A DNA stretch of 64,000 nucleotides, taken from positions 16,259 through 80,258 of the forward strand of contig NIVC01001589.1 of assembly GCA_002269645.1 (NCBI GenBank), given 5' to 3'. Source of the stretch: Macrostomum lignano. Taxonomy: Eukaryota. The translations under genes were made by a program, and so were the position numbers. Below are positions 44,065 to 63,851 of the stretch, piece after piece. Each line of letters begins with the position of its first letter. The first letter of the stretch is position 1. The notes beneath the pieces are model-generated. The model ran no database searches. It was given only the letters and a program-made list of their open reading frames with translations, and was not told where the DNA came from.

Positions 44065-44122
44065 CCCTTTCCTAGAAGGGGTTTCAAAAAAACAGGAAAA
44101 AATCCTTTCCACAGAAATCTTT
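44065..44122 (-). ncRNA. U5 snRNA 3' half, variant C (degenerate)
   Basis: Minus strand AAAGATTTCTGTGGAAAGG...GTTTTTTTG (Sm-like)...CCCCTTCTAGGAAAGGG hairpin. Confidence 0.65.
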
Positions 44123-44345: not shown

Positions 44346-44392
44346 TCTGTGTACAAGAAATTGTGGAGTAATTACTTTTGATTTCATTAGTA

Positions 44393-44460
44393 CCCCTTCT
44401 TGGAAGGGGTTTCACAAATCAGGGAACACTCATTGAATGTTCCTCTCCACGGAAATCTTT
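44393..44460 (-). ncRNA. U5 snRNA 3' half, variant B
   Basis: Minus strand AAAGATTTCCGTGGAGAGGAACA (as in metazoan U5), GAACA/TGTTC stem, Sm-like GATTTGTG, CCCCTTC-CAA-GAAGGGG terminal hairpin. Confidence 0.85.
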
Positions 44461-45052: not shown

Positions 45053-47826
45053 CTACCCTGGGTGGGATTCCCCTGTTTCTTTCCCGACGCCTCATGGCAT
45101 CCCAGAGGACATTGAGGACGGGGTTCGGCCCGGAGCCCGAGGGGCTTCCGGCTCAATGTGGAAGCTGTGGAGCTTGGCTGCCCTCATCTTGAGCAGCCAA
45201 GCCACCCCCAGCTGCTTGACCCTGTCTGCGAGCATCGGCATACCTGCCAGCTTGTGCAGGTATTCAATGCTGATGTAGGATGGCACACCATAGCAGATAC
45301 GGAGAGCCAGGTTTTGATTTTCTGCAATTTGATTTGGTTAGTCGCACAATTTGGCTCAGGATTGGCGCTCCGTAGGTGAGAGCGCTTTCTCCGTATGCCC
45401 TGTACAGCATTCTGAGGGTGGTGCTACTCAGCTTAGTCATTTTTGCAATTCTGCACAGTGACATTACAATGGCTCTGCTGGTATCTGCCATGTTGTCCAC
45501 ATGTTTGTTCAGGCAGAGGCTCTGGTCAAGGAGGACACCCAGGAATTTCACCTCCTGACAGTACGGAACCTCAGTGTCCCCCAGATACAGTTTGGGTCGC
45601 AAGTCCATGCGCCTAGTGGGTTTGTAGTTGAAAGCGATTGCTTTGCTTTTACCGGCATTCAGTCTAATGCCTTGTTTACCGCACCAGTCAAAGACTCGTC
45701 TGAGGTAGCTTTGAAGGGATGTTCGGAGCCCCGCAAAGGTGTCTGCTGAGGCCCAGACGGCCATGTCGTCTGCGAATTGACTGCGTTTGACGCTTGAGAT
45801 GGTGGGAGTCGGCATTGAGCTGACGAAGAGGAGTACAGGAGAGGACTCAGAATGCCTCCCTGAGGGACGCCAGCCTGGATGGTGTGGGGATCGCTTAGGG
45901 CCCCCTCGATTCGAACCTGGATCTGTCTGTCTCGCAGGTAGTCAGACAGGATTCGCATGAGCATAGGTGGAAAACCATCGGTGAGCATGCTATGCCTGAT
46001 CTTGTCGTGCCAGGTGGAGTCAAAAGCTGCCTCTGCATCCAGGAAGACTGCAGCGGACTTTTTAGCTTTGCACTTTGCTACCATGACATCTTGTGCCAGA
46101 CGGCACAGGTTGTCATACGTGGAGTGAATTTTGCGGTAGGCGCATTGGTCATCTCCTAGGGTCTTATTATCCTCAAGGTGCTTGGTGAGTCTTTTTGCTA
46201 TAAGCTTCTCAAACACTTTGCCCAGACATGAGGTCAGGCTGATTGGTCTGTAGGAGTTGGGGTGTTCGGGCGGTTTGTCCGGCTTGGGGATCATTGTCAC
46301 CACAGCTTTCTTCCAGGCGCTGGGGAAAATCCCTCGACCGTAGCAGGCGTTGAAGAGGTTAGTGAGTCTCGTGATTGCCACCCCCTCTAAGCCCAGCTTG
46401 AGGACGCAGTTGGGAATCTTGTCCAGCCCGGGTGCTCCATCAGGCCTGAGGTGCTCCAGTTCCCACACTGTGTCTGCCACAGAGAATGCAGCATCAAGTG
46501 GGTGGGTCTCAATGGGTTCGATTCCCTCAGGAACGGGGTAGAATGAGGTGAGCTGTGCCACATCGGCCACCTCACGTTTGAGCTGTTCGCATGTGGAAGG
46601 GACTGGGCGCATCTTTGAGTCCAGAGTCTCGGCTAGAAGGTTAGCCTTCTCCAGATCTGTGTGCGCAGTTGTTTGACCCAGGGTGAGGCTGGGGATCGAG
46701 GTTGGCTTAAATTTGCCCATCAGCTTTTTAGTGTCATGCCAGAAATTCTTCACTTTCTTGTTCTTGCTGTTTTCAACAATACTCTCACAGACTTTGGTGA
46801 GCTTTCCATTCTGGAAGGAGTTAATTTCTCTCTTTATGCGATTTGCGAGCTGGTTTGCTTGGGTTTTGAAATTTTGATCCCGTGTGCTGAAGAAGAGGCG
46901 TCTGAGTCGTCTGCGCTCTTTGATCAGGTCGAGGATGTACTTGGGTAGGGCGTTTTTGGCACCACAGTCTGGTACTGTGGAGTCAATCACGGTGTGAATG
47001 GCCTTTGTGATGTGATCCACTTCGGCATTGATTTGGTCAGCATTTGATAATTTAATATTCTGATCTGAGCTCAAAGCTTCACTGATTTTGAGTCTGAACT
47101 CGTCCCAGTTTGTTTTTGAGAAGTTTTTGGGTCTGGGGGGACCAGCCCATTTCTTCGACTGAATATTGAGCGTGAGGATTATGGGTAAGTGGTCACTGCC
47201 CAGGTCAGGACCCACCTCAAAGTCCTGCACAAATGGGAGAAAGTCCTCAGTGGCCAGGGCGAGGTCCAAGACATTCCTAGAAATCAGCCCGTTTTTGGTG
47301 GCCAGTCTGGTGAACTGACCGGCTTGATTGAGAATGGTGGCGAGGTGGGGCCCTCAGACAGCCAGTCGTGCAGCTGGTAGCCAGCCATGTTGTTGCTGCT
47401 GTCACCCCCGAGGAAGCGGTGTCTGGCATTGAGGTCACCCATGAGCACACTGCGCCTACGGGAGAGAAGATTTTTGAGTAGGTTCAGGTTCAGATGATAC
47501 GGTGCTGGAGACCTGTACACCAGAGCAAGATTGAAGTCAGGACCAGAGTTGTCAGACAAGCTCACGGTGCAAGAGATGGCTTCATGGTTGACATTGTCAT
47601 ACTGCAAGCGCACATTTGTGAGTTTGACGCGAGGAGAGTGGGCAAGGAGAAGCCCGCGTTTGACTTGCGGGGTATCATACCGAATGATGGAGTACCCGGG
47701 AATCTGGACAGTGTGACAACTTTTGAGAATGGTCTCAGAGAAGAGGGCAATGTCTAGCTCCTGACTGACGACCCACTGTGTCAGCTCTCTGATTTTCGGG
47801 TTGAATCCCCTGCAGTTTAAATGCAT
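45053..47826 (-). pseudogene. ORF2 (APE endonuclease + RT), copy 1, several frameshifts
   Basis: MHLNCRG, FSET, YRSP, GDLNARH, GSDHLP; YRPISLTSCLGK, FLDAEAAFD, GVPQG, QFADD. Confidence 0.9.
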
Positions 47827-47912
47827 AATCTTCAGGGCTGTGGTTTGATTGTTTGAGTCTACAGTTAACGCACTGAAGTTTCAATTCAAGTCTTGAGTTT
47901 AGCTGCCTGAGA

Positions 47913-50616
47913 CTAGGACTCAGTGGTCATGCCAGCCATGCCCGGCACTTCCTGGAGTGCAGCCCGCACAATGTCCTCAACCATTTTACTGGTTGATTCC
48001 ACAGTGAGGACCTCCCCAGGCGGTCGGGACAGGGCCTGCACAACCACTTGAGTCAGAGAGCGGGTGATCAGGGGCAACAGCATGCTCACCACCGACATAA
48101 AGTCACTAAGCTGCAGCTGCACCGCCTGGCCGGCATCAGCTGACGGAGCAGTCGCATTGACATCAGACTCGGTCTCTGCCGCCGGAGCGCTCCTGGCATC
48201 ATCGGTCACGATGACAAGCGGCCGGATCGCGGCGGGTACCGGCACCGTGCGCCTGCCTCGGCGGATCAGCCAGCCGCTGTCGGAGTCGTCGTCGGCGGCG
48301 GCGTCGTCGGTCTCACTTGACACTGGGGCAGCAGCGGCCGCAGCTTCCGCAGCTCGCGCCGCGGCTTTGGCCTCAGCAGCCGCTCTGGTCGCCTTGTCGT
48401 GCTCCGCCTTGGCGACGGTGCAGGCTCGACTGGTGGTTCGGTGCGAGCCGCCGCAGTTGGCGCAGACCGCTGGGCCCTCGTGCTGGCACTCCTTCCAGGA
48501 ATGCTGGCCGCCGCAAATCCGGCAGCGCTGCTGCCCCCGACACTGGCAGCGCGGTGGCCGAACTCCTGGCAGCGCTGGCATTGCAGAGCGCGGACCGGCT
48601 CGTCTGTGCGGCTGTCCTCGCAGTTGAACTTCAAGAAGTCGGTGCAGATGCCATCGCGGAGGCACTTCTCGTAGGTCATCGCCGACTTTGTGAAGATGCG
48701 CACGAACTGGGTTGCCTTCCCAGTCGCTCTGGCTCGGATTCTGTGGACGCTGACAATGTCCAGCTTGAGCGTGTCGCGCAACAGGGTCGCGAAGTCAGCC
48801 TCCGAGAATGCGAGGGGCACCTCAGTAGCGACGAAGGTGCGTACCGGCTGCTGCTGCACTCTGTCGGGCCCTGTTCTGTTGTCCAGCGGTCGGGCTCGGG
48901 CTGGACGGCGCTTTACGGGATGCTCGAGCAGCTTCTCCTCGCGCAGCGCGCCGCCCAGGAAGACGTTGTAGTCCCGCTCCGACGCTGGGAACACGAGATA
49001 GGCCGGCTGATTCGCCATCGGCGCAGTGTTGACGGCTCTAGCTTCGCCGGCAAAGTTGGTCTGCAGCCAGGCAACGAACTGCATCAGCTTGTTGGCCGCG
49101 TCCCGGTGCACCTCAAAAACGATCGGCGGGATGGCAGCCTGGGGCCTTCTGGGCGGCGCAGGGCGCGCCGCAACCTGCGCGTAGGGCCGCGCTGCCGCAG
49201 CCGCCTGCGCGCTTGTCGCCGAAGCCGCCGCCGCACCGGCCGGCCAGGAAGCCGCCGAAGCCGCCGCCGCACCGGACGCCGCGCCGCGACCTCCTCGCCT
49301 GCCTCGCTGGTGGCCGCCACGGCCGCGCCGACCCCGATCGCCTTCGCGGTCTCGCGTCGCCGTCGCCTGCCGCTCCTGGGGCCTGTCGTCGCCCCGGCCG
49401 CCCTGGTCGTCGTCGTGGCCGCCTTGGTCGTCGTCCCGACCGCCTTGGTCGTCGCCGAATGGGCCGCCGTTTAGCGGCTGGCTGTAGGTCGGGTCATCCG
49501 GCAGAGCTCGCTTGCGCCGCAGCTCCGGCTTGGTGACACGGAATGTTAGCGAGATGCGGACGCCATTCTGAGAGTGGGCGGCGGGCACCTGGTGCTGCAG
49601 GCGTTTCTGGCAGTTTCCTGCCATCAGAATCAGCGAGCCTGGCAGCGTTGGAAAGCGGTGCGTCACGTTGCCGTCCCGACGGCGCAGCATGAACAGCCGC
49701 TCAGCGCCGAAGGACACGGTCGCGATCGTCGGCCTGTCGCCGAGCTCATCCTCATCGTCCGAGTGCCAGGGAATCCGGTCTCCCGGCTCGGTGTAGAAGT
49801 TCACCAACACGGAGTTGAACTTCGGGACATCGAACTGGGTATCATGGTAAATGAAGTCACGAATGTCTTCAATTACCTGATGCCAGTCTAGATTTTCCTT
49901 CAGCTCAACCCCGCTGTAGGTGTACGACGGGCCGATCCAGTAGACGCGGCGCTGCTCACTCGGACGATGCTGAAAGGCTTGAGGCAGCAGGTCGGTGATC
50001 AGGCGCTCGTAGACTTGGTCCGCGACCTCGCTCAGGAACTTGGGCGCATAGATGATGGTGCTGTCGCTGGCGTAGATCGTCTGCTGACAGTCAGTCAAGT
50101 CAGGCTCATCAGGGAAGATGATTTGACTGATGTCAGCGTCCAGTTGCTCGGCAGGGGCTTTGGCAGCGTCGAGGCCTGGTCTGCAGCCGATTGCTGGCGC
50201 TCCTCAGACGTCGGCGCTGCCGCTGCCGCACTGAGCTCGCTGGACTCGGCAGTTGGTGGCTCGGTGGTTGCTGCGGCCTCGTTGGATGGCAGGGCGCTTG
50301 TCTGGCCTGGCTCGTCGCAGTCGAGAGACATGCGCTGCTCTGCCTCTGCGCCTGCAGCCTCCGGCAGCTGCTCATTCTCTCGCAGGATCTCCTCTGCGTT
50401 GCGCAAGAGCTCGCCGGCCGGTGGGCTGATCGAGTGGCGGCCTTCCAGACTGCGTCGAGCTCGCATCTGGCCTGCTGGCGGCGGGCTCGCAGTCAATGGC
50501 TCAGCTGTCGGCGTCAGTCCAAGAAGCTGGCGACCGTAGGCTTCGTTCGGACGATACCGGTGCTCGAGAGAGGGCCGGCAGTCCATCTTTTTAGCGCTGG
50601 CGCGATTTGCAGCCAT
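47913..50616 (-). pseudogene. ORF1 (AlkB domain 49535-50065 + gag-like region + 3 CCHC knuckles), copy 1, frameshifts near 50155 and 48545
   Basis: YTYSG, NFY, HSD, HQVP, RISLTFR; knuckles CQRCQEFGH, CRICGGQHSWKEC, CANCGGSHRTTSRAC. Confidence 0.88.
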
Positions 50617-50834
50617 ATGGCGTGATTATTTGGGTGCACTCACACTAAACTAAACTAGACAACTACTAATGAGTCAGGAGGCACACAAAGTGCGCTCGCT
50701 GAGAGGGGTGGGGCGACTGCAAGATAAGACTAGGGGTGGGGTAGAGATAAAAACAAATGTACAGTGGAATGGAAGGCTAACTAAAGTACTTTAAGAGCTA
50801 AGCTAGGCTAGTCTAAACTATTCTATTTCTAATA

Positions 50835-50902
50835 AGCCTTTCTAGGAAAGGCCTGCAAAAACTAGAGAATTCTCCTAAGAGTATCCCTCCACGGAAATCT
50901 TT
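50835..50902 (-). ncRNA. U5 snRNA 3' half, variant A, carried at the 5' end of copy 1
   Basis: AAAGATTTCCGTGGAGGGATAC...AGTTTTTG (Sm)...GCCTTTCCTAGAAAGGC; near-identical to 63740-63806. Confidence 0.85.
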
Positions 50903-51502
50903 GTTGTTAAAACGAGGTGCCGTCGAAACCGGCGCGGGTCAGTTCCGAAGAACTCTGCCGCAGTTATATTTTGTATTTGATCGAAAGAATTAAAAATATT
51001 TACAAGATTTCGATTTGAATATTTAATACGAATATTGAAATTAAAAATATACATATATAAAACTATTTTTCAATATTTTGCAGTATTTTGCACGCATTTG
51101 GGGATAAAAAAGAGGGGAGGGAAATCCCACACAAAGAAGGGATCTAATAAAAACAGGACATCTAAAAAATACGTGCTGATATTTGAAGGCCTATTGAGAG
51201 TAAAAGCAAGACATTTAAGTAAAAAAAATAGAGATTAAAAATGCAATAGCGCATATTTGAATTTAGTTGTAAAAATAGAATGAATATAGTAAAGGTGTAA
51301 AAAAGCAATTAGTGATATTTGTAGAGCAGTTGGGTAAAAAACACAGTTGGGAAAATTGTAAAAAGAAACGCGAGGAGACATAGAGATTACCTAATCAGTC
51401 CTAATGACTGATCAACCGATCTCTGTCTCAGGCAGCAAGTTTAGTTTTATTAGTTGCGTTTCAGAGCGTGGTCACTTCCGGTTTGGAAGGCTGGTAGCCA
51501 GC

Positions 51503-54282
51503 CTAACCCTGGGGTGGGAATCCCCTGTTTCTTTCCCGACGCCTCATGGCATCCCAGAGGACATTGAGGACAGGGGTTCGGCCCGGAGCCCGAGGGGCTT
51601 CCGGCTCAATGTGGAAGCTGTGGAGCTTGGCTGCCCTCATCTTGAGCAGCCAAGCCACCCCCAGCTGCTTGACCCTGTCTGCGAGCATCGGCATACCTGC
51701 CAGCTTGTGCAGGTATTCAATGCTGATGTAGGATGGCACACCATAGCAGATACGGAGAGCCAGGTTTTGAATTTTCTGCAATTTGATTTGGTTAGTCGCA
51801 CAGATTTGGCTCAGGATTGGCGCTCCGTAGGTGAGAGCGCTTTCTCCGTATGCCCTGTACAGCATTCTGAGGGTGGTGCTACTCAGCTTAGTCATTTTTG
51901 CAATTCTGCACAGTGACATTACAATGGCTCTGCTGGTATCTGCCATGTTGTCCACATGTTTGTTCAGGCAGAGGCTCTGGTCAAGGAGGACACCCAGGAA
52001 TTTCACCTCCTGACAGTACGGAACCTCAGTGTCCCCCAGATACAGTTTGGGTCGCAAGTCCATGCGCCTAGTGGGTTTGTAGTTGAAAGCGATTGCTTTG
52101 CTTTTACCGGCATTCAGTCTAATGCCTTGTTTACCGCACCAGTCAAAGACTCGTCTGAGGTAGCTTTGAAGGGATGTTCGGAGCCCCGCAAAGGTGTCTG
52201 CTGAGGCCCAGACGGCCATGTCGTCTGCGAATTGACTGCGTTTGACGCTTGAGATGGTGGGAGTCGGCATTGAGCTGACGAAGAGGAGGTACAGGAGAGG
52301 GCTCAGAATGCCTCCCTGAGGGACGCCAGCCTGGATGGTGTGGGGATCGCTTAGGGCCCCCTCGATTCGAACCTGGATCTGTCTGTCTCGCAGGTAGTCA
52401 GACAGGATTCGCATGAGCATAGGTGGAAAACCATCGGTGAGCATGCTATGCCTGATCTTGTCGTGCCAGGTGGAGTCAAAAGCTGCCTCTGCATCCAGGA
52501 AGACTGCAGCGGACTTTTTAGCTTTGCACTTTGCTACCATGACATCTTGTGCCAGACGGCACAGGTTGTCATACGTGGAGTGAATTTTGCGGTAGGCGCA
52601 TTGGTCATCTCCTAGGGTCTTATTATCCTCAAGGTGCTTGGTGAGTCTTTTTGCTATAAGCTTCTCAAACACTTTGCCCAGACATGAGGTCAGGCTGATT
52701 GGTCTGTAGGAGTTGGGGTGTTCGGGCGGTTTGTCCGGCTTGGGGATCATTGTCACCACAGCTTTCTTCCAGGCGCTGGGGAAAATCCCTCGACCGTAGC
52801 AGGCGTTGAAGAGGTTAGTGAGTCTCGTGATTGCCACCCCCTCTAAGCCCAGCTTGAGGACGCAGTTGGGAATCTTGTCCAGCCCGGGTGCTCCATCAGG
52901 CCTGAGGTGCTCCAGTTCCCACACTGTGTCTGCCACAGAGAATGCAGCATCAAGTGGGTGGGTCTCGATGGGTTCGATTCCCTCAGGAACGGGGTAGAAT
53001 GAGGTGAGCTGTGCCACATCGGCCACCTCACGTTTGAGCTGTTCGCATGTGGAAGGGACTGGGCGCATCTTTGAGTCCAGAGTCTCGGCTAGAAGGTTAG
53101 CCTTCTCCAGATCTGTGTGCGCAGTTGTTTGACCCAGGGTGAGGCTGGGGATCGAGGTTGGCTTAAATTTGCCCATCAGCTTTTTAGTGTCATGCCAGAA
53201 ATTCTTCACTTTCTTGTTCTTGCTGTTTTCAACAATACTCTCACAGACTTTGGTGAGCTTTCCATTCTGGAAGGAGTTAATTTCTCTCTTTATGCGATTT
53301 GCGAGCTGGTTTGCTTGGGTTTTGAAATTTTGATCCCGTGTGCTGAAGAAGAGGCGTCTGAGTCGTCTGCGCTCTTTGATCAGGTCGAGGATGTACTTGG
53401 GTAGGGCGTTTTTGGCACCACAGTCTGGTACTGTGGAGTCAATCACGGTGTGAATGGCCTTTGTGATGTGATCCACTTCGGCATTGATTTGGTCAGCATT
53501 TGATAATTTAATATTCTGATCTGAGCTCAAAGCTTCACTGATTTTGAGTCTGAACTCGTCCCAGTTTGTTTTTGAGAAGTTTTTGGGTCTGGGGGGACCA
53601 GCCCATTTCTTCGACTGAATATTGAGCGTGAGGATTATAGGTAAGTGGTCACTGCCCAGGTCAGGACCCACCTCAAAGTCCTGCACAAATGGGAGAAAGT
53701 CCTCAGTGGCCAGGGCGAGGTCCAAGACATTCCTAGAAATCAGCCCGTTTTTGGTGGCCAGTCTGGTGAACTGACCGGCTTGATTGAGAATGGTGGGCGA
53801 GGTGGGGCCCTCAGACAGCCAGTCGTGCAGCTGGTAGCCAGCCATGTTGTTGCTGCTGTCACCCCCGAGGAAGCGGTGTCTGGCATTGAGGTCACCCATG
53901 AGCACACTGCGCCTACGAGAGAGAAGATTTTTGAGTAGGTTCAGGTTCAGATGGTACGGTGCTGGAGACCTGTACACCAGAGCGAGATTGAAGTCAGGAC
54001 CAGAGTTGTCAGACAAGCTCACGGTGCAAGAGATGGCTTCATGGTTGACATTGTCATACTGCAAGCGCACATTTGTGAGTTTGACGCGAGGAGAGTGGGC
54101 AAGGAGAAGCCCGCGTTTGACTTGCGGGGTATCATACCGAATGATGGAGTACCCGGGAATCTGGACAGTGTGACAACTTTTGAGAATGGTCTCAGAAAGA
54201 GGGCAATGTCTAGCTCCTGACTGACGACCCACTGTGTCAGCTCTCTGATTTTCGGGTTGAATCCCCTGCAGTTTAAATGCAT
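51503..54282 (-). CDS. ORF2 (APE + RT, no RNase H), copy 2, one frameshift near 54196
   Basis: The 945-aa track ORF contains the APE and RT motifs; the true N-terminus MHLNCRG is in the adjacent frame. Confidence 0.9.
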
Positions 54283-54368
54283 AATCTTCAGGGCTGTGGT
54301 TTGATTGTTTGAGTCTACAGTTAACGCACTGAAGTTTCAATTCAAGTCTTGAGTTTAGCTGCCTGAGA

Positions 54369-57071
54369 CTAGGACTCAGTGGTCATGCCAGCCATGCCCG
54401 GCACTTCCTGGAGTGCAGCCCGCACAATGTCCTCAACCATTTTACTGGTTGATTCCACAGTGAGGACCTCCCCAGGCGGTCGGGACAGGGCCTGCACAAC
54501 CACTTGAGTCAGAGAGCGGGTGATCAGGGGCAACAGCATGCTCACCACCGACATAAAGTCACTAAGCTGCAGCTGCACCGCCTGGCCGGCATCAGCTGAC
54601 GGAGCAGTCGCATTGACATCAGACTCGGTCTCTGCCGCCGGAGCGCTCCTGGCATCATCGGTCACGATGACAAGCGGCCGGATCGCGGCGGGTACCGGCA
54701 CCGTGCGCCTGCCTCGGCGGATCAGCCAGCCGCTGTCGGAGTCGTCGTCGGCGGCGGCGTCGTCGGTCTCACTTGACACTGGGGCAGCAGCGGCCGCAGC
54801 TTCCGCAGCTCGCGCCGCGGCTTTGGCCTCAGCAGCCGCTCTGGTCGCCTTGTCGTGCTCCGCCTTGGCGACGGTGCAGGCTCGACTGGTGGTTCGGTGC
54901 GAGCCGCCGCAGTTGGCGCAGACCGCTGGGCCCTCGTGCTGGCACTCCTTCCAGGAATGCTGGCCGCCGCAAATCCGGCAGCGCTGCTGCCCCCGACACT
55001 GGCAGCGCGGTGGCCGAACTCCTGGCAGCGCTGGCATTGCAGAGCGCGGACCGGCTCGTCTGTGCGGCTGTCCTCGCAGTTGAACTTCAAGAAGTCGGTG
55101 CAGATGCCATCGCGGAGGCACTTCTCGTAGGTCATCGCCGACTTTGTGAAGATGCGCACGAACTGGGTTGCCTTCCCAGTCGCTCTGGCTCGGATTCTGT
55201 GGACGCTGACAATGTCCAGCTTGAGCGTGCGCGCAACAGGGTCGCGAAGTCAGCCTCCGAGAATGCGAGGGGCACCTCAGTAGCGACGAAGGTGCGTACC
55301 GGCTGCTGCTGCACTCTGTCGGGCCCTGTTCTGTTGTCCAGCGGTCGGGCTCGGGCTGGACGGCGCTTTACGGGATGCTCGAGCAGCTTCTCCTCGCGCA
55401 GCGCGCCGCCCAGGAAGACGTTGTAGTCCCGCTCCGACGCTGGGAACACGAGATAGGCCGGCTGATTCGCCATCGGCGCAGTGTTGACGGCTCTAGCTTC
55501 GCCGGCAAAGTTGGTCTGCAGCCAGGCAACGAACTGCATCAGCTTGTTGGCCGCGTCCCGGTGCACCTCAAAAACGATCGGCGGGATGGCAGCCTGGGGC
55601 CTTCTGGGCGGCGCAGGGCGCGCCGCAACCTGCGCGTAGGGCCGCGCTGCCGCAGCCGCCTGCGCGCTTGTCGCCGAAGCCGCCGCCGCACCGGCCGGCC
55701 AGGAAGCCGCCGAAGCCGCCGCCGCACCGGACGCCGCGCCGCGACCTCCTCGCCTGCCTCGCTGGTGGCCGCCACGGCCGCGCCGACCCCGATCGCCTTC
55801 GCGGTCTCGCGTCGCCGTCGCCTGCCGCTCCTGGGGCCTGTCGTCGCCCCGGCCGCCCTGGTCGTCGTCGTGGCCGCCTTGGTCGTCGTCCCGACCGCCT
55901 TGGTCGTCGCCGAATGGGCCGCCGTTTAGCGGCTGGCTGTAGGTCGGGTCATCCGGCAGAGCTCGCTTGCGCCGCAGCTCCGGCTTGGTGACACGGAATG
56001 TTAGCGAGATGCGGACGCCATTCTGAGAGTGGGCGGCGGGCACCTGGTGCTGCAGGCGTTTCTGGCAGTTTCCTGCCATCAGAATCAGCGAGCCTGGCAG
56101 CGTTGGAAAGCGGTGCGTCACGTTGCCGTCCCGACGGCGCAGCATGAACAGCCGCTCAGCGCCGAAGGACACGGTCGCGATCGTCGGCCTGTCGCCGAGC
56201 TCATCCTCATCGTCCGAGTGCCAGGGAATCCGGTCTCCCGGCTCGGTGTAGAAGTTCACCAACACGGAGTTGAACTTCGGGACATCGAACTGGGTATCAT
56301 GGTAAATGAAGTCACGAATGTCTTCAATTACCTGATGCCAGTTAGATTTTCCTTCAGCTCAACCCCGCTGTAGGTGTACGACGGGCCGATCCAGTAGACG
56401 CGGCGCTGCTCACTCGGACGATGCTGAAAGGCTTGAGGCAGCAGGTCGGTGATCAGGCGCTCGTAGACTTGGTCCGCGACCTCGCTCAGGAACTTGGGCG
56501 CATAGATGATGGTGCTGTCGCTGGCGTAGATCGTCTGCTGACAGTCAGTCAAGTCAGGCTCATCAGGGAAGATGATTTGACTGATGTCAGCGTCCAGTTG
56601 CTCGGCAGGGGGCTTTGGCAGCGTCGAGGCCTGGTCTGCAGCCGATTGCTGGCGCTCCTCAGACGTCGGCGCTGCCGCTGCCGCACTGAGCTCGCTGGAC
56701 TCGGCAGTTGGTGGCTCGGTGGTTGCTGCGGCCTCGTTGGATGGCAGGGCGCTTGTCTGGCCTGGCTCGTCGCAGTCGAGAGACATGCGCTGCTCTGCCT
56801 CTGCGCCTGCAGCCTCCGGCAGCTGCTCATTCTCTCGCAGGATCTCCTCTGCGTTGCGCAAGAGCTCGCCGGCCGGTGGGCTGATCGAGTGGCGGCCTTC
56901 CAGACTGCGTCGAGCTCGCATCTGGCCTGCTGGCGGCGGGCTCGCAGTCAATGGCTCAGCTGTCGGCGTCAGTCCAAGAAGCTGGCGACCGTAGGCTTCG
57001 TTCGGACGATACCGGTGCTCGAGAGAGGGCCGGCAGTCCATCTTTTTAGCGCTGGCGCGATTTGCAGCCAT
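54369..57071 (-). pseudogene. ORF1 (AlkB + gag knuckles), copy 2, frameshifts near 56342, 55229 and 55000
   Basis: Same motifs as copy 1, split across track ORFs. Confidence 0.85.
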
Positions 57072-57286
57072 ATGGCGTGATTATTTGGGTGCACTCAACT
57101 AAACTAAACTACAACTACTAATGAGTCAGGAGGCACACAAAGTGCGCTCGCTGAGAGGGGTGGGGCGACTGCAAGATAAGACTAGGGGTGGGGTAGAGAT
57201 AAAAACAAATGTACAGTGGAATGGAAGGCTAACTAAAGTACTTTTAAGAGCTAAGCTAGGCTAGTCTAAACTATTCAACTTCAATA

Positions 57287-57354
57287 AGCCTTTCTAGGAA
57301 AGGCCTGCAAAAACTAGAGAATTCTCCTAAGAGTATCCCTCCACGGAAATCTTT
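57287..57354 (-). ncRNA. U5 snRNA 3' half, variant A, carried at the 5' end of copy 2
   Basis: Same sequence as 50835-50902. Confidence 0.85.
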
Positions 57355-57952
57355 GTTGTTAAAACGAGGTGCCGTCGAAACCGGCGCGGGTCAGTTCCGA
57401 AGAACTCTGCCGCAGTTATATTTTGTATTTGATCGAAAGAATTAAAAATATTTACAAGATTTCGATTTGAATATTTAATACGAATATTGAAATTAAAAAT
57501 ATACATATATAAAACTATTTTTCAATATTTTGCAGTATTTTGCACGCATTTGGGGATAAAAAAGAGGGGAGGGAAATCCCGCACAAAGAAGGGATCTAAT
57601 AAAAACAGGACATCTAAAAAATACGTGCTAGATATTTGAAGGCCTATTGAGAATAAAAGCAAGACATTTAAGTAAAAAAAAGAGATTAAAATGCAATAGC
57701 GCATATTTGAATTTAGTTGTAAAAATAGAATGAATATAGTAAAGGTGTAAAAAAGCAATTAGTGATATTTGTAGAGCAGTTGGGTAAAAAACACAGTTGG
57801 GAAAATTGTAAAAAGAAACGCGAGGAGACATAGAGATTACCTAATCAGTCCTAATGACTGATCAACCGATCTCTGTCTCAGGCAGCAAGTTTAGTTTTAT
57901 TAGTTGCGTTTCAGAGCGTGGTCACTTCCGGTTTGGAAGGCTGGTAGCCAGC

Positions 57953-60731
57953 CTAACCCTGGGGTGGGAATCCCCTGTTTCTTTCCCGACGCCTCATGGC
58001 ATCCCAGAGGACATTGAGGACAGGGGTTCGGCCCGGAGCCCGAGGGGCTTCCGGCTCAATGTGGAAGCTGTGGAGCTTGGCTGCCCTCATCTTGAGCAGC
58101 CAAGCCACCCCCAGCTGCTTGACCCTGTCTGCGAGCATCGGCATACCTGCCAGCTTGTGCAGGTATTCAATGCTGATGTAGGATGGCACACCATAGCAGA
58201 TACGGAGAGCCAGGTTTTGAATTTTCTGCAATTTGATTTGGTTAGTCGCACAGATTTGGCTCAGGATTGGCGCTCCGTAGGTGAGAGCGCTTTCTCCGTA
58301 TGCCCTGTACAGCATTCTGAGGGTGGTGCTACTCAGCTTAGTCATTTTTGCAATTCTGCACAGTGACATTACAATGGCTCTGCTGGTATCTGCCATGTTG
58401 TCCACATGTTTGTTCAGGCAGAGGCTCTGGTCAAGGAGGACACCCAGGAATTTCACCTCCTGACAGTACGGAACCTCAGTGTCCCCCAGATACAGTTTGG
58501 GTCGCAAGTCCATGCGCCTAGTGGGTTTGTAGTTGAAAGCGATTGCTTTGCTTTTACCGGCATTCAGTCTAATGCCTTGTTTACCGCACCAGTCAAAGAC
58601 TCGTCTGAGGTAGCTTTGAAGGGATGTTCGGAGCCCCGCAAAGGTGTCTGCTGAGGCCCAGACGGCCATGTCGTCTGCGAATTGACTGCGTTTGACGCTT
58701 GAGATGGTGGGAGTCGGCATTGAGCTGACGAAGAGGAGGTACAGGAGAGGGCTCAGAATGCCTCCCTGAGGGACGCCAGCCTGGATGGTGTGGGGATCGC
58801 TTAGGGCCCCCTCGATTCGAACCTGGATCTGTCTGTCTCGCAGGTAGTCAGACAGGATTCGCATGAGCATAGGTGGAAAACCATCGGTGAGCATGCTATG
58901 CCTGATCTTGTCGTGCCAGGTGGAGTCAAAAGCTGCCTCTGCATCCAGGAAGACTGCAGCGGACTTTTTAGCTTTGCACTTTGCTACCATGACATCTTGT
59001 GCCAGACGGCACAGGTTGTCATACGTGGAGTGAATTTTGCGGTAGGCGCATTGGTCATCTCCTAGGGTCTTATTATCCTCAAGGTGCTTGGTGAGTCTTT
59101 TTGCTATAAGCTTCTCAAACACTTTGCCCAGACATGAGGTCAGGCTGATTGGTCTGTAGGAGTTGGGGTGTTCGGGCGGTTTGTCCGGCTTGGGGATCAT
59201 TGTCACCACAGCTTTCTTCCAGGCGCTGGGGAAAATCCCTCGACCGTAGCAGGCGTTGAAGAGGTTAGTGAGTCTCGTGATTGCCACCCCCTCTAAGCCC
59301 AGCTTGAGGACGCAGTTGGGAATCTTGTCCAGCCCGGGTGCTCCATCAGGCCTGAGGTGCTCCAGTTCCCACACTGTGTCTGCCACAGAGAATGCAGCAT
59401 CAAGTGGGTGGGTCTCGATGGGTTCGATTCCCTCAGGAACGGGGTAGAATGAGGTGAGCTGTGCCACATCGGCCACCTCACGTTTGAGCTGTTCGCATGT
59501 GGAAGGGACTGGGCGCATCTTTGAGTCCAGAGTCTCGGCTAGAAGGTTAGCCTTCTCCAGATCTGTGTGCGCAGTTGTTTGACCCAGGGTGAGGCTGGGG
59601 ATCGAGGTTGGCTTAAATTTGCCCATCAGCTTTTTAGTGTCATGCCAGAAATTCTTCACTTTCTTGTTCTTGCTGTTTTCAACAATACTCTCACAGACTT
59701 TGGTGAGCTTTCCATTCTGGAAGGAGTTAATTTCTCTCTTTATGCGATTTGCGAGCTGGTTTGCTTGGGTTTTGAAATTTTGATCCCGTGTGCTGAAGAA
59801 GAGGCGTCTGAGTCGTCTGCGCTCTTTGATCAGGTCGAGGATGTACTTGGGTAGGGCGTTTTTGGCACCACAGTCTGGTACTGTGGAGTCAATCACGGTG
59901 TGAATGGCCTTTGTGATGTGATCCACTTCGGCATTGATTTGGTCAGCATTTGATAATTTAATATTCTGATCTGAGCTCAAAGCTTCACTGATTTTGAGTC
60001 TGAACTCGTCCCAGTTTGTTTTTGAGAAGTTTTTGGGTCTGGGGGGACCAGCCCATTTCTTCGACTGAATATTGAGCGTGAGGATTATAGGTAAGTGGTC
60101 ACTGCCCAGGTCAGGACCCACCTCAAAGTCTGCACAAATGGGAGAAAGTCCTCAGTGGCCAGGGCGAGGTCCAAGACATTCCTAGAAATCAGCCCGTTTT
60201 TGGTGGCCAGTCTGGTGAACTGACCGGCTTGATTGAGAATGGTGGGCGAGGTGGGGCCCTCAGACAGCCAGTCGTGCAGCTGGTAGCCAGCCATGTTGTT
60301 GCTGCTGTCACCCCGAGGAAGCGGTGTCTGGCATTGAGGTCACCCATGAGCACACTGCGCCTACGAGAGAGAAGATTTTTGAGTAGGTTCAGGTTCAGAT
60401 GGTACGGTGCTGGAGACCTGTACACCAGAGCGAGATTGAAGTCAGGACCAGAGTTGTCAGACAAGCTCACGGTGCAAGAGATGGCTTCATGGTTGACATT
60501 GTCATACTGCAAGCGCACATTTGTGAGTTTGACGCGAGGAGAGTGGGCAAGGAGAAGCCCGCGTTTGACTTGCGGGGTATCATACCGAATGATGGAGTAC
60601 CCGGGAATCTGGACAGTGTGACAACTTTTGAGAATGGTCTCAGAAAAGAGGGCAATGTCTAGCTCCTGACTGACGACCCACTGTGTCAGCTCTCTGATTT
60701 TCGGGTTGAATCCCCTGCAGTTTAAATGCAT
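57953..60731 (-). pseudogene. ORF2 (APE + RT), copy 3, frameshifts near 60310 and 60128
   Basis: 722-aa intact RT portion plus APE in neighbouring frames. Confidence 0.88.
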
Positions 60732-60817
60732 AATCTTCAGGGCTGTGGTTTGATTGTTTGAGTCTACAGTTAACGCACTGAAGTTTCAATTCAAGTCTTG
60801 AGTTTAGCTGCCTGAGA

Positions 60818-63520
60818 CTAGGACTCAGTGGTCATGCCAGCCATGCCCGGCACTTCCTGGAGTGCAGCCCGCACAATGTCCTCAACCATTTTACTGGTTG
60901 ATTCCACAGTGAGGACCTCCCCAGGCGGTCGGGACAGGGCCTGCACAACCACTTGAGTCAGAGAGCGGGTGATCAGGGGCAACAGCATGCTCACCACCGA
61001 CATAAAGTCACTAAGCTGCAGCTGCACCGCCTGGCCGGCATCAGCTGACGGAGCAGTCGCATTGACATCAGACTCGGTCTCTGCCGCCGGAGCGCTCCTG
61101 GCATCATCGGTCACGATGACAAGCGGCCGGATCGCGGCGGGTACCGGCACCGTGCGCCTGCCTCGGCGGATCAGCCAGCCGCTGTCGGAGTCGTCGTCGG
61201 CGGCGGCGTCGTCGGTCTCACTTGACACTGGGGCAGCAGCGGCCGCAGCTTCCGCAGCTCGCGCCGCGGCTTTGGCCTCAGCAGCCGCTCTGGTCGCCTT
61301 GTCGTGCTCCGCCTTGGCGACGGTGCAGGCTCGACTGGTGGTTCGGTGCGAGCCGCCGCAGTTGGCGCAGACCGCTGGGCCCTCGTGCTGGCACTCCTTC
61401 CAGGAATGCTGGCCGCCGCAAATCCGGCAGCGCTGCTGCCCCGACACTGGCAGCGCGGTGGCCGAACTCCTGGCAGCGCTGGCATTGCAGAGCGCGGACC
61501 GGCTCGTCTGTGCGGCTGTCCTCGCAGTTGAACTTCAAGAAGTCGGTGCAGATGCCATCGCGGAGGCACTTCTCGTAGGTCATCGCCGACTTTGTGAAGA
61601 TGCGCACGAACTGGGTTGCCTTCCCAGTCGCTCTGGCTCGGATTCTGTGGACGCTGACAATGTCCAGCTTGAGCGTGCGCGCAACAGGGTCGCGAAGTCA
61701 GCCTCCGAGAATGCGAGGGGCACCTCAGTAGCGACGAAGGTGCGTACCGGCTGCTGCTGCACTCTGTCGGGCCCTGTTCTGTTGTCCAGCGGTCGGGCTC
61801 GGGCTGGACGGCGCTTTACGGGATGCTCGAGCAGCTTCTCCTCGCGCAGCGCGCCGCCCAGGAAGACGTTGTAGTCCCGCTCCGACGCTGGGAACACGAG
61901 ATAGGCCGGCTGATTCGCCATCGGCGCAGTGTTGACGGCTCTAGCTTCGCCGGCAAAGTTGGTCTGCAGCCAGGCAACGAACTGCATCAGCTTGTTGGCC
62001 GCGTCCCGGTGCACCTCAAAAACGATCGGCGGGATGGCAGCCTGGGGCCTTCTGGGCGGCGCAGGGCGCGCCGCAACCTGCGCGTAGGGCCGCGCTGCCG
62101 CAGCCGCCTGCGCGCTTGTCGCCGAAGCCGCCGCCGCACCGGCCGGCCAGGAAGCCGCCGAAGCCGCCGCCGCACCGGACGCCGCGCCGCGACCTCCTCG
62201 CCTGCCTCGCTGGTGGCCGCCACGGCCGCGCCGACCCCGATCGCCTTCGCGGTCTCGCGTCGCCGTCGCCTGCCGCTCCTGGGGCCTGTCGTCGCCCCGG
62301 CCGCCCTGGTCGTCGTCGTGGCCGCCTTGGTCGTCGTCCCGACCGCCTTGGTCGTCGCCGAATGGGCCGCCGTTTAGCGGCTGGCTGTAGGTCGGGTCAT
62401 CCGGCAGAGCTCGCTTGCGCCGCAGCTCCGGCTTGGTGACACGGAATGTTAGCGAGATGCGGACGCCATTCTGAGAGTGGGCGGCGGGCACCTGGTGCTG
62501 CAGGCGTTTCTGGCAGTTTCCTGCCATCAGAATCAGCGAGCCTGGCAGCGTTGGAAAGCGGTGCGTCACGTTGCCGTCCCGACGGCGCAGCATGAACAGC
62601 CGCTCAGCGCCGAAGGACACGGTCGCGATCGTCGGCCTGTCGCCGAGCTCATCCTCATCGTCCGAGTGCCAGGGAATCCGGTCTCCCGGCTCGGTGTAGA
62701 AGTTCACCAACACGGAGTTGAACTTCGGGACATCGAACTGGGTATCATGGTAAATGAAGTCACGAATGTCTTCAATTACCTGATGCCAGTCTAGATTTTC
62801 CTTCAGCTCAACCCCGCTGTAGGTGTACGACGGGCCGATCCAGTAGACGCGGCGCTGCTCACTCGGACGATGCTGAAAGGCTTGAGGCAGCAGGTCGGTG
62901 ATCAGGCGCTCGTAGACTTGGTCCGCGACCTCGCTCAGGAACTTGGGCGCATAGATGATGGTGCTGTCGCTGGCGTAGATCGTCTGCTGACAGTCAGTCA
63001 AGTCAGGCTCATCAGGGAAGATGATTTGACTGATGTCAGCGTCCAGTTGCTCGGCAGGGGGCTTTGGCAGCGTCGAGGCCTGGTCTGCAGCCGATTGCTG
63101 GCGCTCCTCAGACGTCGGCGCTGCCGCTGCCGCACTGAGCTCGCTGGACTCGGCAGTTGGTGGCTCGGTGGTTGCTGCGGCCTCGTTGGATGGCAGGGCG
63201 CTTGTCTGGCCTGGCTCGTCGCAGTCGAGAGACATGCGCTGCTCTGCCTCTGCGCCTGCAGCCTCCGGCAGCTGCTCATTCTCTCGCAGGATCTCCTCTG
63301 CGTTGCGCAAGAGCTCGCCGGCCGGTGGGCTGATCGAGTGGCGGCCTTCCAGACTGCGTCGAGCTCGCATCAGGCCTGCTGGCGGCGGGCTCGCAGTCGA
63401 TGGCTCAGCTGTCGGCGTCAGTCCAAGAAGCTGGCGACCGTAGGCTTCGTTCGGACGATACCGGTGCTCGAGAGAGGGCCGGCAGTCCATCTTTTTAGCG
63501 CTGGCGCGATTTGCAGCCAT
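60818..63520 (-). CDS. ORF1, copy 3: open for 646 aa through the AlkB domain (62438-62968); frameshifts near 61678 and 61445 before and within the knuckles
   Basis: MAANRASAKK...; N273-x-Y275, H285-x-D287, H342, R354, R360. Confidence 0.88.
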
Positions 63521-63739
63521 ATGGCGTGATTATTTGGGTACACTCAAACTAAACCTAAACTACAACTAACTAATGAGTCAGGAGGCACACAAAGTGCGCT
63601 CGCTGAGAGGGGTGGGGCGACTGCAAGATAAGACTAGGGGTGGGGTAGAGATAAAAACAAATGTACAGTGGAATGGAAGGCTAACTAAAGTACTTTCAAG
63701 AGCTAAGCTAGGCTAGTCTAAACTATTCAACTTCCAATA

Positions 63740-63851
63740 AGCCTTTCTAGGAAAGGCCTGCAAAAACTAGAGAATTCTCCTAAAGTATCCCTCCACGGAA
63801 ATCTTTAGTAAAAGGCGAAAGATTTAATCGTGGAATGAAGAAACCAGAGCT
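63740..63851 (-). ncRNA. RNU5: Complete U5 spliceosomal snRNA gene (~112 nt), formed from the host 5' half and the element-carried 3' half
   Basis: Minus strand AGCTCTGGTTTCTTCATTCCACGATTAAATCTTTC GCCTTTTAC TAAAGATTTCCGTGGAGGGATAC...AGTTTTTG CAGGCCTTTCCTAGAAAGGC: invariant loop I, AAATCTTT/AAAGATTT stem, Sm site and 3' hairpin. The core is identical to the recalled metazoan U5 segment AAAUCUUUCGCCUUUUACUAAAGAUUUCCGUGGAG. Confidence 0.95.

What the first reader, a model, noticed from the sequence alone, without database searches (positions are those of the whole stretch)
62438..62968. AlkB (2OG-Fe(II) dioxygenase) domain inside LINE ORF1
Seen in sequence: ORF1 aa ~185-361 has the YTYSG lid, FNSVLVNFY, W-H285-S-D287, H342 and R354-ISLTF-R360, so the iron and 2-oxoglutarate ligands are all present. 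The domain is in frame with the downstream gag-like region and occurs in all three copies (also 49535-50065 and 55990-56520). Established: ALKBH2/3-type enzymes remove m1A/m3C, lesions that block reverse transcriptase, and plant RNA viruses (flexi- and closteroviruses) carry AlkB domains. Inference: the element may package a demethylase in its RNP to repair or de-modify its own RNA or cDNA, or to counter host methyl marks. This is unusual cargo for a LINE.
Basis: partly seen in the sequence, partly recalled or inferred. Interest (0 to 1): 0.85.

Follow-up and report, generated by a model that had tools for sequence, protein, structure and literature searches.

The report
LINE retrotransposon carrying an AlkB demethylase
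A flatworm (Macrostomum lignano) LINE retrotransposon has an intact, selectively conserved ALKBH3-like nucleic-acid demethylase domain fused to the front of its gag-like ORF1 protein; I found no published report of this cargo in a LINE, and the three copies sit head to tail inside a U5 snRNA gene.

Summary
On the minus strand, ORF 61580-63520 (646 aa) has a PF13532 AlkB domain (E=2e-21). Its closest solved relative is human ALKBH3, by sequence (E=9e-24) and by predicted fold (TM about 0.8).

The domain belongs to ORF1 of an APE+RT LINE present as three 6.45-kb head-to-tail copies, about 99.7% identical. In the window the copies carry 1-nt frame breaks. For the first copy, every ORF1 break is contradicted by the GenBank version of the same locus, so these look like long-read indel errors.

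Diverged relatives (37-42% identity in the domain) encode uninterrupted AlkB-gag ORF1s, one followed by an EN/RT ORF2. All catalytic residues are invariant, and AlkB is the most constrained part of ORF1 (dN/dS about 0.07-0.24; linkers 0.37-0.72). A more distant relative has a normal ORF1 without AlkB.

The likely function is an ORF1p-tethered demethylase that clears RT-blocking m1A/m3C from the element's RNA or cDNA. This is inferred, not tested. I found no paper describing AlkB in a LINE.

Unexpectedly, every unit starts with the 3' half of U5 snRNA, and the array regenerates an intact U5 gene.

The parts
62438..62968 (-). AlkB (2OG/Fe(II) dioxygenase) domain of copy U3, aa 185-361 of ORF1. 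The Pfam-matched core is 62441-62857.
   Evidence: Pfam PF13532 E=2.1e-21. Human ALKBH3 E=8.8e-24. AF2 pLDDT 86 and Foldseek top hits ALKBH3, TM 0.74-0.85.
61580..63520 (-). U3 ORF1 as readable in the window (646 aa): N-terminal low-complexity region, AlkB, G/R/A-rich linker and RRM-like 'PPIVFEV...AYLVFP' module. It stops at 61580 because of a 1-nt indel at 61679.
60818..61697 (-). U3 remainder of ORF1: the 'FVRIFTKS' module, three CCHC knuckles (CX2CX4HX4C, CX2CX3HX4C, CX2CX3HX6C) and a C-terminal helix. Frame breaks at 61679, 61450 and 61443 exist only in the window version.
   Evidence: tblastn frames. Window versus GenBank version. Intact 399-aa ORF in L001 11506-12705.
57953..60731 (-). 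U3 ORF2 (APE endonuclease + reverse transcriptase, no RNase H). Two 1-nt breaks (60315, 60130) in the window version; intact 926 aa in L001.
   Evidence: Pfam RVT_1 1e-36 and Exo_endo_phos_2..
57355..63806 (-). LINE unit U3: U5 3' half (63740-63806), 5' leader, ORF1, ORF2, A/T-rich 3' UTR with terminal stem-loops, and an (AAC)2 tail. No poly(A).
50903..57354 (-). LINE unit U2. AlkB is at 55990-56520 with a 1-nt deletion at 56343. ORF2 51503-54340 is an uninterrupted 945-aa ORF in the window (ATG at 54282).
44461..50902 (-). LINE unit U1, the most diverged copy. AlkB is at 49535-50065. ORF 48266-50098 reads from AlkB through to knuckle 1. ORF2 has several indels. The tail is (AAC)1.
63740..63851 (-). 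Full-length U5 snRNA gene. The 5' half (63807-63851) is unique flank. The 3' half (63740-63806) is the first 67 nt of LINE unit U3. The junction lies at the loop I / stem boundary (...CCUUUUACU|AAAGAUUUCCG...).
   Evidence: Rfam RF00020, 78.4 bits against GA 40, model positions 1-117. 83.8 bits in L001.
44123..44460 (-). Short derivative element: a second variant of the U5 3' half, a diverged homologue of the LINE 3' UTR, and an (AAC)2 tail.
   Evidence: Read from the sequence. Motif scan.
44050..44122 (-). Third variant of the U5 3' half (AAAGATTTCTGTGGAAAGG..., Sm-like U-run and terminal hairpin), followed by unique sequence. Probably the displaced 3' half of the original target gene.
   Evidence: inference.
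30456..43305 (.). 12.8-kb satellite of 30-bp units (428 copies) flanking the array. Context only.
   Evidence: TRF. Composition.

Best explanation
**What it is (shown).** This is an autonomous APE-type LINE of Macrostomum lignano.
- Its ORF1 protein is about 900 aa when read across the assembly indels.
- The protein is a fusion: an N-terminal ALKBH3-like Fe(II)/2-oxoglutarate dioxygenase domain, a disordered G/R/A-rich linker, and a canonical I/Jockey-style gag (an RRM-like module and three CCHC knuckles).
- The domain has every catalytic residue and is the most conserved part of ORF1 across a family of such elements.

**How it most likely works (inferred).** ORF1p coats the element's own RNA in cis, so the fused enzyme is concentrated on the template. 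There it oxidatively removes N1-methyladenine and N3-methylcytosine. These lesions or marks block the Watson-Crick face and stall reverse transcriptases. The substrate would be the RNA template and possibly the nascent single-stranded cDNA, allowing full-length target-primed reverse transcription. This is the logic proposed for the AlkB domains of plant RNA virus replicases.

**Context (partly shown, partly inferred).** Each unit begins with the 3' half of U5 snRNA, and its (AAC)n tail abuts the same U5 nucleotide. The family therefore appears to insert site-specifically in U5 loop I and to rebuild an intact U5 gene at its 5' junction. That would explain the head-to-tail array. It also suggests co-transcription from the U5 promoter.
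For: **Identity of the domain.**
- Pfam PF13532 E=2e-21.
- Best solved relatives are human ALKBH3 (E=9e-24), then ALKBH2 (E about 2e-15).
- AF2 model pLDDT 86 / pTM 0.85. Foldseek top hits are ALKBH3 bound to ssDNA (E=3e-17, TM 0.76-0.85), with E. coli AlkB and ALKBH5/FTO-type folds far lower.
- H285, D287, H342, R354, R360 and the NSxLxNxY motif are invariant in an alignment of seven ORF1 proteins from five clusters that share only about 37-42% identity with the window's domain.

**Part of the LINE.**
- Same position in three units.
- Intact AlkB-gag ORF1s in P0041, P0043, P0048 and P0050.
- L002 carries ORF1 (843 aa) followed by an EN/RT ORF2.
- L013 has the fusion in one ORF, with an ORF2 56% identical to the window's.

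**Selection.**
- AlkB has the lowest dN of all ORF1 regions. dN/dS is 0.07 (P0041/P0043, dS saturated) and 0.24 (window/L013). Linkers give 0.37-0.72.

**Gain of the domain.**
- A relative with 30% ORF2 identity (L016) has a 402-aa ORF1 with three knuckles and no AlkB.

**Frame breaks.**
- 18 of 20 differences between the window and the GenBank version of the same locus are 1-nt indels. Every U3 ORF1 break is absent from one of the two versions.

**Precedent for the mechanism.**
- Viral AlkB domains repair methylated RNA (PMC2553587).
- A Ty3/Gypsy-encoded AlkB is an active RNA demethylase (PMC9289625).

**U5 context.**
- Rfam U5 at 78-84 bits.
- Five junctions at the same U5 nucleotide, involving three U5 3'-half variants and two element types.
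Against: - No activity, substrate or RNP association has been measured.
- ALKBH3-likeness rests on sequence and fold ranking. The NJ tree puts the retroelement AlkBs next to animal ALKBH3-like genes without bootstrap support, and their own clade has only 59% support.
- dS is saturated in the most informative pairs, so the dN/dS values are rough.
- All window copies have at least one frame break as assembled, and U2's break inside AlkB is present in both assemblies.
- The species behind the Logan contigs is unknown, so the taxonomic breadth is unclear.
- The U5 specificity rests on one locus. The relatives' contigs show no U5 pieces.
Confidence: 0.55

Rival explanations
1. The domain is an m6A (or m6Am) eraser that strips host epitranscriptomic marks from the element's transcript to escape m6A-dependent decay or silencing. 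This was proposed for the orchid Ty3/Gypsy ALKBH5-like ORF.
For: A retrotransposon-encoded AlkB with m6A demethylase activity exists (PMC9289625). m6A is known to affect L1 (PMC7873242, listed).
Against: By sequence and fold the domain is of the ALKBH3/ALKBH2 type, not ALKBH5/FTO. From established knowledge, that group mainly acts on m1A/m3C.
Confidence: 0.17
2. The enzyme acts mainly on DNA. It would repair alkylated single-stranded target DNA or cDNA exposed during target-primed reverse transcription, or demethylate 6mA/3mC at the integration site, rather than acting on the RNA template.
For: The best structural matches are ALKBH3 and ALKBH2 bound to DNA. TPRT exposes ssDNA (established knowledge).
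Against: The domain is fused to ORF1p, the RNA-coating protein, not to ORF2p, which works at the DNA target. The segment that carries an 'FGK' motif in the aligned bacterial and ALKBH2-type homologues is missing in the whole LINE family. From memory, that hairpin is ALKBH2's duplex-probing finger, so its absence argues against dsDNA.
Confidence: 0.15
3. The domain is a decaying passenger or purely structural module with no catalytic role. Alternatively it is an annotation or assembly artefact, such as a host exon joined to a LINE.
For: All three window copies have frame breaks as assembled, and U2 has one inside the domain in both assemblies.
Against: - Catalytic residues are invariant at about 40% identity, and AlkB has the lowest dN in ORF1.
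- Intact fusions occur in several independent contigs and sequencing runs.
- The breaks differ between assemblies of the same locus.
Confidence: 0.04

Closest known systems
Human ALKBH3 (and ALKBH2): cellular AlkB-type m1A/m3C demethylases
   Same: Same fold and the same HxD...H iron triad and R...R 2OG motif. ALKBH3 is the best sequence hit (E=9e-24) and the best structural hit (TM about 0.8).
   Different: Only about 31-33% identical. Here it is a domain of a retrotransposon gag-like protein, not a free-standing host enzyme. The region before the 'RxxxWxGP' strand is shortened. Orthology is not resolved.
AlkB domains in replicases of plant RNA viruses (Flexiviridae, closteroviruses)
   Same: A selfish RNA-based replicator carries an AlkB domain inside its own polyprotein. 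The proposed role is removing methyl lesions from its own RNA (PMC2553587). The folds match.
   Different: Those are RdRp-based plant viruses with the domain inside the replicase. Identity to them is 20-30%, lower than to ALKBH3. Here the replicator is a reverse-transcribing animal LINE and the domain is in ORF1.
Orchid (Phalaenopsis) Ty3/Gypsy elements with an ALKBH5-like ORF
   Same: A retrotransposon lineage that acquired an AlkB-family demethylase. Activity and RNA binding were shown in vitro (PMC9289625).
   Different: That is an LTR element in plants, with the domain in a separate additional ORF of the ALKBH5-like (m6A) subgroup. Here it is a non-LTR element in a flatworm, fused to gag, of the ALKBH3-like subgroup.
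I/Jockey-type LINEs with modular ORF1s (PHD, esterase, RRM and CCHC modules)
   Same: ORF1 with an RRM-like module and three CCHC knuckles in the CX2CX4HX4C / CX2CX3HX4C / CX2CX3HX6C pattern. ORF2 has APE + RT. L016 shows the plain version.
   Different: An AlkB module has not, to my knowledge or in the searched literature, been listed among ORF1 accessory domains. The exact clade was not resolved. There is no poly(A); the tail is (AAC)n.
snRNA-gene-targeting transposons (Keno and Utopia in U2, Dada-U1, Dada-U6; a Tx1 family listed with a U5 target)
   Same: Insertion at one precise nucleotide of a spliceosomal snRNA gene. Tandem insertions occur (PMC4640811). A U5 target is mentioned in a figure legend of PMC4494074.
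   Different: This is a different element type: an I/Jockey-like gag, not Tx1 or RLE. Here each unit carries the snRNA 3' half, so an intact U5 is rebuilt at the 5' junction. Specificity is documented at one locus only.

Membership tests
AlkB / ALKBH family (PF13532, 2OG-Fe(II) dioxygenase) | Significant match to the family profile above the curated threshold | tested here: met
   77.5 bits against a cutoff of 31.2, E=2.1e-21. 6734 AlkB-type hits in the exhaustive search.
AlkB / ALKBH family (PF13532, 2OG-Fe(II) dioxygenase) | HxD...H iron-binding triad and RxxxxxR 2-oxoglutarate-binding motif | tested here: met
   H285, D287, H342, R354 and R360 are present. They align to the corresponding ALKBH3 residues and are invariant in the LINE family and in 36 homologues.
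AlkB / ALKBH family (PF13532, 2OG-Fe(II) dioxygenase) | Double-stranded beta-helix fold with an N-terminal nucleotide-recognition region | tested here: met
   AF2 pLDDT 86. Foldseek to ALKBH3/ALKBH2 gives E about 1e-17 to 1e-13 and TM 0.7-0.85.
AlkB / ALKBH family (PF13532, 2OG-Fe(II) dioxygenase) | Oxidative demethylase activity | not testable with these tools
   Needs biochemistry.
ALKBH3 subgroup (ssDNA/RNA m1A/m3C demethylase) | Closer to ALKBH3 than to other ALKBH paralogues | tested here: met
   PDB phmmer: ALKBH3 8.8e-24 against ALKBH2 1.8e-15. No other paralogue appears at E<0.01. Foldseek ranks ALKBH3 first.
ALKBH3 subgroup (ssDNA/RNA m1A/m3C demethylase) | Phylogenetic placement within animal ALKBH3 orthologues | tested here: inconclusive
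   In the NJ tree the retroelement AlkBs form a clade (bootstrap 59). It sits next to M. lignano and crinoid ALKBH3-like proteins without support. Bacterial AlkBs score similarly.
Autonomous APE-type LINE (non-LTR retrotransposon) | ORF2 with an N-terminal APE endonuclease and a reverse transcriptase | tested here: met
   Exo_endo_phos_2 2.8e-11 and RVT_1 1.7e-36 in the 945-aa ORF2 of U2. Same result in L001.
Autonomous APE-type LINE (non-LTR retrotransposon) | gag-like ORF1 upstream of ORF2 on the same strand | tested here: met
   RRM-like module and three CCHC knuckles, aligned with relatives.
Autonomous APE-type LINE (non-LTR retrotransposon) | Poly(A) or simple-repeat 3' tail; multiple copies | tested here: met
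   No poly(A). The (AAC)1-2 tail varies in repeat number between junctions. Three near-identical copies plus a short derivative are present.
Specific LINE clade (Jockey / I / R1 / CR1 ...) | RT phylogeny against reference clade members | not tested
   No reference RT set was on hand. PDB hits to R2 and L1 ORF2p are equally weak. Distant ORF2 relatives include RNase H-bearing elements. The knuckle spacing suggests the I/Jockey supergroup (from memory).
Target-specific LINE (U5 snRNA gene) | Independent insertions joined to the same nucleotide of the target | tested here: met
   Five junctions at ...ACT|AAAGATTTC..., with three different U5 3'-half variants and (AAC)1 versus (AAC)2 tails. The U5 identity comes from Rfam.
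Target-specific LINE (U5 snRNA gene) | Genome-wide restriction of copies to the target gene | not testable with these tools
   Only this locus of the M. lignano genome was accessible. The relatives' contigs carry no U5 pieces.

The most novel reading that the evidence does not exclude
Two claims together.

1. Flatworm retroelements have recruited a nucleic-acid demethylase as standard equipment. A whole family of LINEs fuses AlkB to gag. A probable Penelope-like element (L012) has an AlkB ORF whose domain clusters with the LINE ones. This would imply that base methylation of template RNA (m1A/m3C or similar) is a real barrier to reverse transcription in vivo, through damage or host defence, and that retroelements evolve counter-measures.

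2. This particular LINE is a U5-snRNA-gene-specific element that carries its own copy of the U5 3' half. It would rebuild a working U5 gene at every insertion and ride the U5 promoter. That would be a eukaryotic LINE counterpart of tRNA-gene-regenerating integrative elements.
Probability: 0.3. Interest if true: 0.85.

Novelty: new variant of a known kind. Interest (0 to 1): 0.72.

Why it matters
LINE ORF1 proteins are usually thought of as RNA chaperones, with only a few accessory modules (PHD, esterase). A conserved, apparently active nucleic-acid demethylase fused to ORF1p would be a new enzymatic activity in the LINE RNP.

It also gives a natural experiment. If the catalytic residues matter for retrotransposition, then methylated bases in the template limit reverse transcription in vivo. 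This has been suspected from in vitro RT stalling and from the AlkB domains of RNA viruses, but not shown for retrotransposons in animals.

M. lignano is a transgenic-capable model, so the idea is testable.

The U5 arrangement adds a possible new example of a transposon that repairs the essential gene it lands in.

Tried and rejected
1. **First whole-ORF1 homology search.** The low-complexity linker swamped it, so only self hits came back. I repeated it with the domain alone.
2. **Telomeric HeT-A/TART-like array.** I considered this because of the head-to-tail LINEs next to a satellite. I dropped it once the unit junctions proved to be U5 snRNA halves and the organism proved to be a flatworm.
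3. **Target-site duplication as the source of the repeated U5 3' half.** Rejected. The 3' half downstream of U1 is a different variant, and only 16 nt are shared.
4. **Species of the Logan runs carrying the relatives.** No paper cites those run accessions.
5. **LINE clade assignment through PDB and named homologues.** Uninformative.
6. **U5 pieces in the relatives' contigs.** None found.
7. **dN/dS for P0048/P0050.** dS was saturated, so only dN ranks are usable.
8. **Tandem structure in L002.** None found.
9. **Full-length consensus.** I deliberately did not build one for the element. Only ORF1 protein segments were joined, for alignment.
Full report
**1. What is at the coordinates**

The feature lies on the minus strand. 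ORF 61580..63520(-) encodes 646 aa, and window 62438-62968 is aa 185-361 of it.
- YTYSG at 232-236 and FNSVLVNFY at 267-275.
- W284-H285-S-D287, H342 and R354-ISLTF-R360.

Pfam PF13532 (2OG-FeII_Oxy_2) matches aa 222-360 with E=2.1e-21, 77.5 bits against a cutoff of 31.2. The equivalent ORFs of the other two copies match as well.

Among solved structures, the best sequence matches are human ALKBH3 (2iuw, E=8.8e-24) and then ALKBH2 (about 2e-15). The alignment places the HxD, the second His and the RxxxxxR motif on their ALKBH3 counterparts. An AlphaFold2 model built on 36 homologues has mean pLDDT 86 and pTM 0.85. Foldseek returns ALKBH3-ssDNA complexes first (E=3e-17, TM 0.76-0.85), then ALKBH2. 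E. coli AlkB, ALKBH6 and ALKBH8 come far behind. Viral AlkB domains match structurally at only 20-30% identity.

**2. The element around it**

The window's right end holds three head-to-tail units with a period of about 6450 bp, about 99.7% identical. Each unit has, in order:
- a leader;
- ORF1 (ATG at 63520, 57071 and 50616);
- ORF2 with an APE endonuclease and a reverse transcriptase (RVT_1 about 1e-36, Exo_endo_phos_2 about 3e-11; 945 aa uninterrupted in U2);
- an A/T-rich 3' UTR ending in stem-loops;
- an (AAC)n tail, with no poly(A).

The source is Macrostomum lignano, contig NIVC01002892.1.

**3. Is AlkB really fused to gag?**

In the window as given, the answer differs by copy:
- U3 and U2 stop after the RRM-like module, at 61580 and 55132.
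- U1 has an extra base at 48774 and reads on into knuckle 1.
- All three copies need a further shift inside knuckle 1.
- U2 has a 1-nt deletion inside AlkB at 56343.
- U1 has a 1-nt deletion at 50158, upstream of AlkB.

I aligned the window to the GenBank version of the same locus (L001; L001 position 9514 corresponds to window 64000). There are 20 differences in 11.6 kb, and 18 of them are 1-nt indels. In L001 the U3 gag part is one uninterrupted ORF running from the RRM-like module through 'FVRIFTKS' and three CCHC knuckles to the C-terminus. ORF2 there is an intact 926 aa. L001's only ORF1 break (at 11109) is absent from the window. Every U3 ORF1 break is therefore contradicted by the other assembly. 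The simplest reading is long-read consensus error over an intact ORF1 of about 901 aa. U2's break in AlkB is shared by both versions and may be real.

**4. Relatives**

An exhaustive profile-free search of 1.84 billion representative proteins with the domain alone ranked long proteins first after the self hits: P0041 (962 aa), P0043 (757), P0048 (892), P0050 (843) and the M. lignano UniRef entries P0047/P0190. They share 37-42% identity with the window's domain.

Their sequences show the same architecture in a single ORF: AlkB, a non-conserved linker, an RRM-like module, an 'LVRxFT' module, three knuckles and a C-terminal helix.
- Contig L002 has such an ORF1 followed by an EN/RT ORF2.
- The ORF2 search found closer relatives. 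L013 has an ORF2 56% identical to the window's and has AlkB and gag in one uninterrupted ORF.
- L016, with 30% ORF2 identity, has an ordinary 402-aa ORF1 with three knuckles and no AlkB. The domain therefore looks like an N-terminal addition in one sublineage.

The Logan contigs come from at least three sets of sequencing runs whose species I could not identify.

**5. Selection**

The Fe and 2OG ligands and surrounding motifs are invariant across the family, while the linkers are unalignable. Nei-Gojobori estimates:

| Pair | Region | dN | dN/dS |
|---|---|---|---|
| P0041 / P0043 | AlkB | 0.23 | 0.07 (dS saturated) |
| | knuckle core | 0.28 | 0.17 |
| | linker | 0.71 | 0.37 |
| Window / L013 | AlkB | 0.36 | 0.24 |
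| | RRM-like | | 0.39 |
| | knuckles | | 0.44 |
| | linker | | 0.72 |

For P0048 / P0050, dS is saturated, but AlkB again has the lowest dN (0.30). AlkB is the most constrained part of ORF1.

**6. Origin**

Outside the retroelements, the nearest proteins fall into two groups:
- roughly 200-aa bacterial or metagenomic AlkBs;
- animal ALKBH3-like proteins: a crinoid ALKBH3-like protein, and M. lignano P0052 and P0196. P0052 carries C2H2 fingers and is present in several paralogous contigs, so it is probably a host gene.

An NJ tree groups all retroelement AlkBs together (bootstrap 59). It places them beside the animal ALKBH3-like group without support. A single capture from a host ALKBH3-like gene is plausible but not shown.

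The whole LINE family lacks the hairpin segment that carries 'FGK' in the aligned homologues. From memory, this corresponds to the duplex-probing finger of ALKBH2. Its absence would fit single-stranded substrates. This is inference.

**7. Mechanism**

- **Shown:** a catalytically complete, conserved ALKBH3-type domain is covalently linked to the RNA-binding gag-like ORF1p of a LINE.
- **Established knowledge:** ALKBH3 and AlkB remove m1A and m3C from ssDNA and RNA. These bases stall reverse transcriptases. LINE ORF1 proteins bind their own RNA in cis. AlkB domains of plant RNA viruses repair RNA (PMC2553587). An orchid Ty3/Gypsy AlkB is an active RNA demethylase (PMC9289625).
- **Inferred:** the fusion concentrates a demethylase on the element's template, and perhaps on its cDNA, to keep it readable by the RT.

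The rivals are listed separately: an m6A eraser, a DNA-directed role, and a non-functional passenger.

**8. Unexpected context**

Rfam finds a full-length U5 snRNA at 63851..63740(-), with 78.4 bits against GA 40 and 83.8 bits in L001. It straddles the 5' boundary of the first unit (63806).
- The sequence 'AAAGATTTCCGTGGAG...' that opens every unit is the U5 3' half: the stem strand, the Sm-like site and the terminal hairpin.
- The element's (AAC)n tail always abuts that same nucleotide, at the loop I / stem boundary.
- Five such junctions are present (63806, 57354, 50902, 44460, 44122). They involve three different U5 3'-half variants, (AAC)1 or (AAC)2 tails, and a 338-bp derivative made of a U5 3' half plus a diverged 3' UTR.

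The best reading is site-specific insertion into U5 loop I by an element that carries a U5 3' half at its 5' end. That 3' half could be part of the mobile unit, or it could arise through co-transcription from the U5 promoter and homology-guided 5' joining, as described for R2. The upstream junction would then rebuild an intact U5, and repeated insertion would give the head-to-tail array.

Published snRNA-targeting transposons are Keno and Utopia (U2), Dada-U1 and Dada-U6 (PMC4640811). A U5 target for a Tx1 family appears in a figure legend of PMC4494074. Here the evidence is one locus only, and the relatives' contigs show no U5 pieces.

**9. Novelty**

Eight full-text searches found no description of an AlkB domain in a LINE or a Penelope-like element. 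The precedents are RNA viruses and one plant LTR lineage. I rate this a new variant of a known kind: a LINE with a new enzymatic ORF1 module. It is real, conserved and testable. Function remains inferred.

Noticed in passing
window 63740-63851 (-); junctions at 63806, 57354, 50902, 44460, 44122: A full-length U5 snRNA gene straddles the start of the LINE array. Every LINE unit begins with the U5 3' half, and every (AAC)n tail abuts the same U5 nucleotide. This suggests a U5-gene-specific LINE that regenerates its target gene.
   Followed up: partly
window 44123-44460 (-): A 338-bp unit made of a variant U5 3' half, a diverged copy of the LINE 3' UTR and an (AAC)2 tail. It could be an internally deleted or SINE-like non-autonomous derivative with an snRNA-derived head.
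   Followed up: no
L012 3134-7083 (Logan SRR19193851): An AlkB ORF (P0045, 569 aa; cluster member P0191 is 1012 aa) lies directly upstream of an ORF with weak RVT_1 and GIY-YIG matches. That combination suggests a Penelope-like element. Its AlkB clusters with the LINE AlkBs (bootstrap 59). A second retroelement class may carry AlkB.
   Followed up: partly
window versus L001 (NIVC01002892.1:78898-100043): The window and the GenBank assembly of the same locus differ at 20 positions in 11.6 kb, and 18 are single-base indels. ORF breaks in this region are therefore unreliable.
   Followed up: yes
window 30456-43305: A 12.8-kb, 99%-homogeneous satellite of 30-bp units (AAACTCACTGACTACAAGGTAAACACACAC, 428 copies) lies about 750 bp beyond the end of the LINE/U5 array (44050). 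A degenerate variant is at 30256-30455.
   Followed up: no
window 14536-15685, 16461-19979, 20795-21171, 10279-10453: Four more tandem arrays, with 29-bp, 35-bp, 21-bp and 40-bp units. The 35-bp array has strong C-over-G skew. The region is satellite-rich.
   Followed up: no
L001 about 8800-9080: A satellite of roughly 18-bp units (AAATATCACAAACCCG...) lies about 600 bp upstream of the U5 gene, just beyond the window's end.
   Followed up: no
window 28724-29608 (+): An ORF fragment matches the Core-2/I-branching enzyme family (PF02485, E=4e-9). It is probably an exon or remnant of a host glycosyltransferase gene.
   Followed up: no
P0052 / P0193 / P0194 and P0196 (M. lignano proteins): M. lignano has free-standing ALKBH3-like genes. 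One type has N-terminal C2H2 zinc fingers fused to AlkB. These are candidate donors of the LINE domain.
   Followed up: partly
L002 4346-4717, L006/L007 about 3177-3643: In the AT-richer relatives, a conserved small ORF of about 123 aa with no Pfam match sits between ORF1 and the EN/RT ORF. It could be a separate ORF or the frameshifted N-terminus of ORF2.
   Followed up: no
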